A stretch of 58,085 nucleotides of DNA, filler included, from Sluysia triapertura (taxonomy: Eukaryota): the NCBI GenBank assembly GCA_046118255.1. It is 4 parts of 4 records of this genome, joined end to end, with 100 filler letters (N's around TTAATTAATTAA, not from the genome) between each part and the next. Parts side by side here need not be neighbours in the genome. Positions count along the whole stretch, not along the records: positions 39,436 to 58,085 come from JBJNIA010133066.1; 3 more parts are not named here. The stretch is one strand, 5' to 3'. Positions 49,919-50,075 of the stretch are shown here, piece by piece. A model generated the notes under the pieces. It had not been told where the DNA came from. It searched no databases and saw only the letters and a program-made list of their open reading frames with translations. Position 1 is the stretch's first letter; every line of letters starts with the position of its first letter. A program made the translations under genes and the position numbers.

Positions 49919-50075
49919 TGTTGGGGTAAAAGACCTAAAAAGTGCCAAGTAGTACAATTGAATGTATTAAAAATGAAATTGTCAGACGGGGCTGATAGCT
50001 CAGTGGTAGAGCATCGACTGCGCAGACGATGGTCCCGGGTTCGATCCCGGTCAGTCCATTTTATGAAGTCTAAAA
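49919..50075 (+). mobile_element. tRNA-Ala-like mini-element, copy B (tRNA-like body 49989-50058)
   Basis: TGTTGGGGTAAAAGACCTAAA leader; GGGCTGA/TCAGTCC acceptor stem with G3:U70; A box TAGCTCAGTGG, B box GTTCGATCC; TTTT terminator; GTCTAA end. Confidence 0.88.

What the first reader, a model, noticed from the sequence alone, without database searches (positions are those of the whole stretch)
49919..50075. Non-canonical tRNA-carrying mini-element (TG..CA ends, conserved upstream leader), 4 copies in 58 kb
Seen: copies at 5784-5939(-), 30819-31279, 49919-50075 and 50937-51021 share ~60-65 bp upstream of the tRNA-like body and start TGTTGGG; those with a 3' end finish in GTCTAACA (GTCTAAAA in copy B). 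The body is bracketed by an inverted repeat TGTTAGAC/GTCTAACA and followed by TTTT. The acceptor stem GGGCTGA/TCAGTCC is fully paired with a G3:U70 pair (the alanine identity element) yet differs from canonical tRNA-Ala, and the anticodon arm is rebuilt around the palindrome TGCGCA. Established: ordinary tRNA-SINEs start at the Pol III start site and end in a tail, so they do not carry upstream flank; Cassandra TRIMs carry 5S rRNA in their LTRs. Inference: a tRNA analogue of Cassandra (solo mini-LTR with a Pol III promoter) or a tRNA-bearing MITE, possibly making an alanylatable tRNA-like RNA.
Basis: partly seen in the sequence, partly recalled or inferred. Interest (0 to 1): 0.8.

Follow-up and report, generated by a model that had tools for sequence, protein, structure and literature searches.

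The report
High-copy tRNA-derived mobile repeat with leader
A roughly 157-base repeat, built around a dead tRNA-like gene and always carried with about 70 bases of upstream leader, occurs thousands of times in this AT-rich animal genome; it is a real mobile element whose layout matches the published 'Helenus' tRNA-bearing mini-LTRs, but the LTR mechanism could not be proven here.

Summary
The copy at 49919-50075 is a full unit: a 70-bp leader, a 70-nt tRNA-like body (Rfam tRNA 51.5 bits), TTTT, then a 13-bp trailer. The copy at 50937-51021 has the same leader and tRNA nucleotides 1-18, then runs into a 5'-truncated non-LTR reverse transcriptase. Public contigs of the probable source organism pile up about 10^3-10^4 times deeper on exactly 49903-50104 than on the flanks, and the leader is as deep as the body. 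So the leader belongs to a very abundant dispersed repeat.

The body is not a working tRNA. Its anticodon arm is a closed near-palindrome, and ARAGORN assigns no amino acid. It most resembles tRNA-Cys(GCA) with a GC insertion. The G3:U70/A73 acceptor stem also occurs in genuine tRNA-Ala genes.

The "tRNA analogue of Cassandra" already exists in print as Helenus (TRIMp3, Kojima 2024). Its LTR consensuses have the same layout, and some have the same TGTTGG(GG)...AACA ends. I rank a Helenus-like solo LTR first (about 0.4). However, copy A has no 4-5-bp target duplication, and no paired LTRs, PBS or PPT could be examined. A MITE and an atypical SINE remain open. It is probably a new member of a known kind, of moderate interest.

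The parts
49919..50075 (+). Full-length unit (copy A) of the repeat family: leader, tRNA-like body and trailer. It starts TGTTGGGG and ends GTCTAAAA (family consensus GTCTAACA).
   Evidence: The sharp depth step (about 143 to 955,342 to 554,759 to 211) brackets it.
49919..49988 (+). 70-bp leader, U3-like in the LTR reading. It contains an A/T-rich TATA-like stretch at 49963-49973. 49964 is a private G; 96% of contig depth has A there, giving TATATTAAAAA at -26 to -16.
   Evidence: Shared with copy B. As deep as the body. The 49964 G>A row is, table 3.
49989..50058 (+). tRNA-derived body with intact acceptor, D and T arms, an A box (49996-50006) and a B box (50038-50048). The anticodon arm is a closed near-palindromic hairpin, and the T loop is 1 nt short in this copy.
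   Evidence: In one search, 38% of depth has an extra C after 50045, which restores a 7-nt T loop.
50059..50075 (+). Trailer: a T4 run (50059-50062, Pol III terminator-like) followed by 13 bp that belong to the repeat.
   Evidence: The 3' loose-end consensus ...TCAGTCCATTTTACGAAGTCTAACAAT is, table 7.
50937..51021 (+). Copy B: the leader plus tRNA nucleotides 1-18, cut off in the D-loop region.
   Evidence: Depth is 69,016 in the bin 50913-51013.
51022..51826 (+). 5'-truncated non-LTR retrotransposon fragment abutting copy B. The RT frame is open over 51019-51630. The 3' end at about 51826 is inferred only from a depth step.
   Evidence: Pfam RVT_1 at 8.5e-08. The best solved-structure matches are the R2 RT-like protein (residues 564-671 of 1114) and L1 ORF2p. 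A contig of run X3 aligns from 51027 and has 260 further upstream letters of its own (table 8).
49627..49729 (+). Fragment of a second high-copy repeat. Its 49680-49725 stretch resembles the majority variant of the leader, so the two may share a module. Whether it belongs to the finding is uncertain.
   Evidence: depth about 1e5; also present in X2-X4. (18 of 20 matches to the leader loose-end consensus, p 0.004)..

Best explanation
Shown: copy A and copy B belong to a very abundant, dispersed, non-autonomous repeat of about 157 bp, with on the order of 10^4 copies. Its core is a tRNA-derived RNA polymerase III module with intact A and B boxes and a T4 terminator. It is not a decoding tRNA. 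The roughly 70-bp leader and the 13-bp post-terminator trailer are parts of the mobile unit.

Inferred: the unit is most likely the LTR of a Helenus-type TRIM (TRIMp3), and copy A is a solo LTR.
- The leader would act as U3 and may supply an upstream TATA-like element.
- The tRNA-like body would supply the internal Pol III promoter and roughly corresponds to R.
- The trailer would be U5.
- Reverse transcription of the LTR type, with two strand transfers performed by a Gypsy-like helper, is the known retro-mechanism that regenerates promoter-upstream and post-terminator sequence in every new copy. That would explain why a 'tRNA gene with its flanks' is what moves.
- Most copies would then be solo LTRs left by LTR-LTR recombination.

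Copy B was later truncated by the insertion of a 5'-truncated non-LTR element in the D-loop region.
For: 1. Repeat status and boundaries: one search gives summed depths of 955,342 and 554,759 on 49903-50104, against 143-211 in the flanks. Individual single LINE contigs are at 11-28. In total 21,555 X1 contigs were laid on 3 kb. There are two copies in this 18.6-kb piece.
2. The leader belongs to the unit: both copies begin at the same point, and leader depth is at least as high as body depth.
3. Pol III module: plus the A and B boxes and T4 read.
4. Among divergent family members, the contigs keep the A-box and B-box sides but carry unalignable 22-39-nt anticodon-arm segments (table 5c). This is the pattern expected if source copies are selected for Pol III promoter function. 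Kojima describes the same for Helenus. It favours RNA-mediated spread over a cut-and-paste MITE.
5. Ends are TGTT...AACA in the consensus, as in LTRs.
6. Published Helenus LTR consensuses (109-323 bp) show the same order: leader, tRNA-like part, T-run, short tail ending CA. Some start TGTTGG or TGTTGGGG and end AACA (text).
7. Seven X1 contigs join the unit's end (50073) to a unit start (50937 or 50990) (table 5). Head-to-tail neighbours therefore exist, as reported for tandem TRIM arrays.
8. There is no 5'-truncation gradient, no A-rich or LINE-like tail, and no tail homology to the adjacent LINE. These points argue against LINE-driven retroposition.
Against: - Copy A has no 4-bp or 5-bp target duplication (CTAT or ACTAT upstream, GTTT or GTTTA downstream).
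- No internal domain, PBS or PPT was seen. The 861 bp between copies A and B is at background depth and has no TGG-type PBS or purine tract at its ends.
- No well-supported conserved extension beyond the 3' end appears among the listed loose ends of X1. If an internal domain exists, it is rare relative to the LTR.
- A copy number in the 10^4 range exceeds any Helenus family reported (maximum 5,575 LTRs).
- No specific k-mer of this element occurs in the published Helenus consensus file.
- Both 5' ends are preceded by the same TA(T), and the 3' consensus is followed by AT. That could mean the true termini are ATTGTT/AACAAT, or that there is a TA duplication; either would point to a DNA transposon.
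- Pol III would have to read through the T4 run in the 5' LTR.
Confidence: 0.4

Rival explanations
1. A MITE-like DNA element. A tRNA pseudogene cassette lies between short terminal inverted repeats (ATTGTT...AACAAT, or the inner 10-bp pair ATTGTTAGAC...GTCTAACAAT). A transposase supplied in trans cuts and pastes it, possibly with a TA target duplication.
For: - It is small, has sharp ends and a very high copy number.
- Both 5' ends are preceded by TA (TA|TTGTTGGG), and the 3' consensus ends ...AACAA|T.
- Copy B's ATTGTTAGAC (50993-51002) and the 3' consensus form a perfect 10-bp inverted repeat around the body.
- DNA-level movement trivially explains why the leader and the post-terminator trailer travel with the body.
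Against: - The outer terminal inverted repeat is only about 6 bp. Its extension is not better than shuffles (p 0.1-0.5).
- Copy A's 3' flank is GT, not TA.
- Variation between subfamilies appears concentrated in the anticodon arm, while the A- and B-box sides are kept (table 5c). A MITE does not predict this.
- No matching transposase end was identified.
Confidence: 0.2
2. An atypical tRNA-derived SINE, or another LINE-dependent retroposon. Its transcript starts about 70 nt upstream of the tRNA-like part, for example a '1.5-mer' whose left part is a decayed tRNA half, or a composite that shares a 5' module with another repeat.
For: - It has an intact internal Pol III promoter and a SINE-like copy number, in a genome that holds non-LTR elements.
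- Leader B aligns weakly with the 5' half of the body (p 0.046).
- The leader shares a roughly 20-45-nt module with the neighbouring high-copy repeat at 49680-49725.
- There is a weak 5-of-7 direct repeat, TTACTAT (49912-49918) against TTATTAC (50086-50092), beyond an A-rich stretch.
Against: - TFIIIC-directed initiation lies about 10-20 bp upstream of box A (established knowledge), not 77 bp.
- A T4 terminator sits inside the unit, 13 bp before its conserved end.
- There is no A-rich, microsatellite or LINE-derived tail in the consensus, and no homology to the adjacent LINE's 3' region.
- There is no 5'-truncation gradient; the 5' half is deeper than the 3' half.
- Leader A shows no similarity to the body (p 0.26).
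Confidence: 0.2
3. A functional tRNA-like gene family, or remnants of a tandem tRNA gene array. The copies would be maintained for a cellular role, such as a small RNA that can be charged with alanine.
For: - The acceptor stem is perfect, with G3:U70 and A73. The D and T arms and the terminator are intact in the family consensus.
- The same acceptor stem occurs in genuine tRNA-Ala genes.
Against: - The anticodon arm is non-canonical, and ARAGORN assigns no isotype.
- The anticodon arm differs among family members (table 5c).
- The copies number in the thousands to tens of thousands, are dispersed with unique flanks, and are 78% identical within this piece.
- One copy is destroyed by a LINE.
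- No RNA run holds the sequence, though that does not show it is silent.
Confidence: 0.05

Closest known systems
[quoted passage not shown]
   Same: - The short terminal repeat unit contains a tRNA-like sequence with conserved A and B boxes that is unlikely to encode a working tRNA.
- The order is the same: leader, tRNA-like part, T-run, short tail.
- It has TG...CA ends; some families start TGTTGG(GG) and end AACA.
- LTRs of 109-323 bp bracket our 157 bp.
- Solo LTRs and tandem arrays are reported.
- It is found in several animal phyla.
   Different: - No paired LTRs, PBS, PPT or 4-bp target duplication were demonstrated here.
- Copy number is about one order of magnitude above the largest reported family.
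- No sequence relationship to the published consensuses was found by k-mer look-up.
- The tRNA-like part resembles Cys/Ala. The tRNAs the paper aligns its Helenus LTRs with are Lys (Hymenoptera, molluscs), Val (fish) and Thr (fungi).
Cassandra, a plant TRIM with 5S rRNA-derived LTRs
   Same: The concept is the same: a Pol III gene-derived promoter and terminator inside a mini-LTR.
   Different: It carries 5S rather than tRNA, occurs only in plants, and has demonstrated LTR pairs, a PBS and a PPT.
tRNA-derived SINEs (SINE2)
   Same: They have a tRNA-derived internal Pol III promoter, very high copy number and dispersed distribution.
   Different: SINEs begin at the Pol III start and end in an A-rich, simple-repeat or LINE-derived tail. 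This unit has a 70-bp leader, an internal T4 terminator and a fixed 13-bp trailer.
MITEs (for example Stowaway-like, with a TA duplication)
   Same: Size, abundance, sharp termini, a short terminal inverted repeat, and TA before both 5' ends.
   Different: The terminal repeat is only about 6 bp. The TA on the 3' side was not seen in copy A. The core is a Pol III gene relic.

Membership tests
Helenus / TRIMp3 | The repeat unit contains a tRNA-derived sequence with conserved A and B boxes. | tested here: met
   Rfam tRNA at 51.5 bits. A box at 49996-50006 and B box at 50038-50048.
Helenus / TRIMp3 | The unit is bounded by TG...CA with a short terminal inverted repeat. | tested here: met
   TGTTGGGG at 49919 and 50937. 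The 3' consensus is GTCTAACA in public contigs. Copy A itself reads ...AAAA.
Helenus / TRIMp3 | Two LTRs flank an internal portion with a PBS and a PPT. | tested here: inconclusive
   No such pair exists in the piece, and the interval between copies A and B lacks a PBS and PPT. Seven contigs join a unit end to a unit start, with unknown letters between. One contig of another organism continues ...CA TT TGGTGAGCCC, which is PBS-like but unmatched.
Helenus / TRIMp3 | A 4-bp (animals) or 5-bp (fungi, plants) target site duplication. | tested here: not met
   For copy A the flanks are CTAT|unit|GTTT and ACTAT|unit|GTTTA. This is a single copy, and solo LTRs arising from recombination between different elements can lack a duplication.
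tRNA-derived SINE (SINE2) | The element starts at the Pol III start, with the tRNA-related head at its 5' end. | tested here: not met
   A 70-bp leader is shared by both copies and is as deep as the body.
tRNA-derived SINE (SINE2) | An A-rich, simple-repeat or LINE-derived 3' tail, with no internal terminator. | tested here: not met
   A T4 run lies at 50059-50062, inside the unit. The consensus has a fixed 13-bp trailer. There is no similarity to the adjacent LINE's 3' region.
MITE | Terminal inverted repeats of about 10 bp or more. | tested here: not met
   Only ATTGTT/AACAAT is present at the outer ends; the extension is not significant. An inner 10-bp pair exists around the body only.
MITE | A fixed target site duplication, for example TA. 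| tested here: inconclusive
   TA precedes both 5' ends. The 3' consensus stops at ...CAAT. Copy A's 3' flank is GT.
Functional tRNA-Ala gene | A 7-nt anticodon loop carrying an alanine anticodon. | tested here: not met
   ARAGORN reports 'tRNA-???'. Rfam aligns 10 rather than 11 nt in the arm. The arm is a near-palindrome.
Functional tRNA-Ala gene | The G3:U70 pair and the A73 discriminator. | tested here: met
   Read. The same acceptor stem occurs in the tRNA-Ala genes of L002 and L003.

The most novel reading that the evidence does not exclude
This is a complete Pol III gene cassette (upstream TATA-like leader, tRNA-like body, terminator, trailer) that has reached 10^4-10^5 copies. Either it is by far the most prolific TRIMp3 known, in a lineage where none has been described, or it spreads by a route that is not a SINE, an LTR element or a MITE. 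Its processed transcripts (G3:U70, A73, closed anticodon hairpin) would be CCA-tailed and charged with alanine, making a non-decoding tRNA mimic in large amounts.
Probability: 0.1. Interest if true: 0.7.

Novelty: new member of a known kind. Interest (0 to 1): 0.4.

Why it matters
If it is a Helenus-type element, it would extend Pol III-driven LTR retroelements (TRIMp3) to another, very AT-rich animal genome. Its copy number would be an order of magnitude above any reported family.

It would also show that tens of thousands of 'tRNA pseudogene' calls in such a genome can come from LTRs rather than SINEs. That matters for tRNA gene annotation and for repeat classification. It also matters for the map of TFIIIC and Pol III binding sites, which can act as insulators or regulatory elements.

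If the LTR hallmarks are absent genome-wide, the element becomes more interesting. It would then be a mobile unit that carries promoter-upstream and post-terminator sequence without any known mechanism for doing so.

Tried and rejected
Attempts to obtain more copies:
- Two metagenome scans. The first found none. The second found three unrelated genuine tRNA genes only.
- A viral-contig scan and a prokaryote-genome scan found nothing.
- Protein-word searches with the RT fragment and with the open frame that runs through the element found nothing.
- An exact-product look-up of the RT ORF found nothing.
- A literature search for four element k-mers found nothing.
- The sequencing-run and read-laying runs were each used once. 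All four runs are contigs of unrecorded kind and none is on record as RNA, so expression could not be tested.

Hypotheses rejected or not supported:
- Copies A and B as the two LTRs of one element. The interval has background depth, there is no PBS or PPT, and the copies are only 78% identical.
- A tandem tRNA array. The flanks are unique.
- The leader as a decayed tRNA half (p 0.046 for leader B and 0.26 for leader A).
- An extended terminal inverted repeat.
- SINE-LINE tail sharing with the adjacent LINE.
- The leader as another known RNA family (Rfam with a permissive threshold gave only chance-level hits).
- A PBS complementary to the element's own tRNA-like 3' end elsewhere in the window (one search found only the element itself).
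- The PBS-like TTTGGTGAGCCC continuation, seen in one contig of another organism, matches nothing in the Helenus supplement.

Other:
- The thermodynamic fold of the body alone keeps the acceptor and T arms but not a canonical D or anticodon arm.
- The organism could not be identified. Run names are coded, and the atlas search says only that the neighbouring exons are EF-hand/reticulocalbin-like.

Full report
**Context**

The usable piece (39436-58085) is about 22% G+C throughout. It carries EF-hand, reticulocalbin-like exons on the minus strand, (ATA)n microsatellites and transposon debris. It is therefore an intron-rich, AT-rich eukaryotic locus, most likely animal.

**Checking the observation**

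ARAGORN finds one tRNA-like gene in the piece, at 49989-50058(+). It cannot assign an amino acid ('tRNA-???', anticodon 'gcgc'). Rfam gives the same coordinates: RF00005 at 51.5 bits against a gathering score of 29. One nucleotide is missing from the T loop, and the anticodon arm has 10 rather than 11 nucleotides.

Read directly:
- The acceptor stem GGGCTGA/TCAGTCC is fully paired, with G3:T70 and A73.
- The A box TAGCTCAGTGG (49996-50006) and the B box GGTTCGATCCC (50038-50048) are perfect.
- TTTT follows the discriminator base (50059-50062).
- The unit ends GTCTAAAA at 50075.
- The stretch 50009-50034 is a 26-nt near-palindrome centred on TGCGCA, so the anticodon arm is a closed hairpin, not a 7-nt loop.

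The second copy shares everything from TATTGTTGGG (50935 in copy B, 49917 in copy A) to tRNA nucleotide 18. Identity is 78% over 90 bp, with E 7e-15 inside the piece. The 16-mer across the leader-body junction occurs exactly twice in the window, against 0.01 expected. No further copy, whole or partial, lies in the piece.

**The decisive evidence: public contigs**

I laid the Logan contigs of four public runs on 49600-52600 at 80% likeness. In run X1, the probable source organism (2,230 contigs at 99% identity or better), summed depth is as follows:

| Bin | Summed depth |
|---|---|
| 49802-49902 | 143 |
| 49903-50003 | 955,342 |
| 50004-50104 | 554,759 |
| 50105-50205 | 211 |

Individual single LINE contigs have depths of 11-28. 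The tool warns that summed depth is not a copy number. As an order of magnitude, this means roughly 7x10^3 to 5x10^4 copy equivalents. That agrees with the local density of two copies in 18.6 kb.

What one search shows about the family:
- The leader half is at least as deep as the body half. The leader is therefore part of the repeat, and there is no 5'-truncation gradient.
- Copy A is close to the family consensus. Its only majority difference is a private G at 49964. With the consensus A, the stretch reads TATATTAAAAA at -26 to -16 from the tRNA start.
- 38% of the depth has an extra C after 50045, which restores a canonical 7-nt T loop.
- The consensus of contigs that run past 50048 reads ...TCAGTCCATTTTACGAAGTCTAACAAT. 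The family therefore ends GTCTAACA, and the 8-bp inverted repeat with copy B's TGTTAGAC is real.
- Contigs of divergent family members align on the A-box side and again from the variable loop and B box onwards. In between they carry unalignable 22-39-nt segments (table 5c).
- Seven contigs join a unit end (50073) to a unit start (50937 or 50990). Head-to-tail neighbours exist but are rare.

**Origin of the body**

A metagenome scan for the first 24 nt of the body returned three genuine tRNA genes:
- a tRNA-Cys(GCA) pair (L001);
- a tRNA-Ala(CGC) (L002);
- a tRNA-Ala(UGC) (L003).

The body matches the tRNA-Cys best, with 61 of 74 alignment columns identical. The main differences are a GC insertion in the anticodon loop (CTGC[GC]AGA) and single-base deletions beside the stem. 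The two tRNA-Ala genes share the entire acceptor stem, including G3:U70 and A73.

It may descend from a tRNA-Ala, or it may be a C-to-T change in a Cys-like ancestor. Either way, nothing suggests a decoding function.

**Copy B**

The homology to copy A stops at 51021. From 51019 a 204-codon frame is open. It matches Pfam RVT_1 (8.5e-08). Among solved structures it best matches the R2 RT-like protein (residues 564-671 of 1114) and L1 ORF2p. A related contig in run X3 aligns from 51027 and has 260 more upstream letters of its own (table 8).

Copy B is thus cut by a 5'-truncated non-LTR element. The missing 3' part of the unit is not found downstream.

**What kind of mobile element is it?**

*Plain tRNA-SINE.* This is contradicted on three tested points:
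- The 70-bp leader belongs to the unit.
- A T4 run lies 13 bp before the conserved end.
- There is no A-rich or LINE-like tail, and no similarity to the neighbouring LINE's 3' region.

*MITE.* This would explain the carried flanks. TA precedes both 5' ends. However, the outer terminal inverted repeat is only ATTGTT/AACAAT, and its extension is no better than shuffles. Copy A's 3' flank is not TA. A MITE also does not predict the pattern of conserved A and B boxes with a variable anticodon arm.

Helenus is a TRIM whose LTRs contain a tRNA-derived sequence. It is grouped with Cassandra and Ajax as TRIMp3 (Kojima 2024, PMC10886601).
- Helenus occurs in fungi, one plant and six animal phyla.
- Animal families make 4-bp target duplications and have PBSs matching Gypsy elements.
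- Solo LTRs and tandem arrays are reported.
- The tRNA-like parts are mostly non-functional, with conserved A and B boxes.
- The consensus LTRs in its supplement (109-323 bp) show the same order as our unit: leader, tRNA-like part, T-run, short tail ending CA. Several start TGTTGG or TGTTGGGG and end AACA.

The LTR replication scheme (U3-R-U5) is also the one known retro-mechanism that regenerates promoter-upstream and post-terminator sequence in each new copy. I therefore rank a Helenus-like solo LTR first.

The defining features remain unproven:
- Copy A has no 4- or 5-bp duplication (CTAT against GTTT).
- No pair with a PBS and PPT is available.
- The interval between copies A and B is not an internal domain.
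- The copy number is higher than any reported Helenus family.
- None of the element's specific k-mers occurs in the published consensus file.
- One contig from another organism continues after ...GTCTAA with CA TT TGGTGAGCCC. This looks like an LTR-PBS junction, but it matches nothing I could check.

**Verdict**

- The feature is real and far from chance.
- It is a mobile repeat, not a tRNA gene or a gene array.
- It is not a plain SINE.
- Its best-fitting known kind is Helenus/TRIMp3 (about 0.4). A MITE (0.2) and an atypical SINE (0.2) remain open.
- It is most likely a new member of a known kind. It would be of specialist interest for its abundance and for tRNA and repeat annotation.
- The genome-wide tests listed under next steps would settle the question quickly.

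Noticed in passing
window 49627-49729 (+): This is a fragment of a second high-copy repeat, with depth about 1e5 in X1; it is also present at about 88% identity in the three other organisms. Other copies continue past 49729 with CGGTAAAATTATACTTGATATAC. Its stretch 49680-49725 resembles the majority variant of the tRNA element's leader (18 of 20 matches, p 0.004), which suggests a module shared by the two families.
   Followed up: partly
window 52327-52530 (+) and 46495-46606 (-): This is a third very abundant repeat family, with depth about 2-4x10^5 in X1. It is present here as an inverted pair about 5.8 kb apart (arms 71-82% complementary) and is rich in TTTTCTTTTTTAGAAA-type subrepeats. It was not classified.
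   Followed up: no
window 51018-51027, and the joint 50003->51113: The LINE abuts copy B at tRNA positions 15-18. One other X1 contig joins the equivalent element position (50003) to a different LINE position (51113). Two truncation points at one element position would suggest site-specific insertion of this non-LTR family into the D-loop region. This rests on a single contig with a 28-nt side, so it is weak.
   Followed up: partly
window 45257-45466 (-) and 42447-42620 (-): These are EF-hand exons (EF-hand_7 at 5e-10; reticulocalbin-like by atlas features) of a spliced minus-strand gene. The tRNA element lies upstream of them or in a further intron.
   Followed up: partly
window 43298-43480 (-): A 61-codon open frame ends ...LIRGTPLRTRKLLDNKGGQTK. 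From memory it looks like the C-terminus of a Tc1/mariner transposase. Pfam found nothing, so this is unverified.
   Followed up: partly
window 51721-51826 (+): Depth peaks here (28,259) downstream of the RT frame. The stretch contains a perfect 7-bp hairpin, CGCTTAC-A-GTAAGCG. It is probably the structured 3' end of the non-LTR family.
   Followed up: no
L002 1249-1844: This metagenome contig carries a tight cluster of five tRNA genes (Ala-CGC, Ser-TGA, Ser-GCT, Thr-GGT, Tyr-GTA) in AT-rich DNA. It is unrelated to the element and was recovered only through the shared acceptor and D-arm sequence.
   Followed up: no
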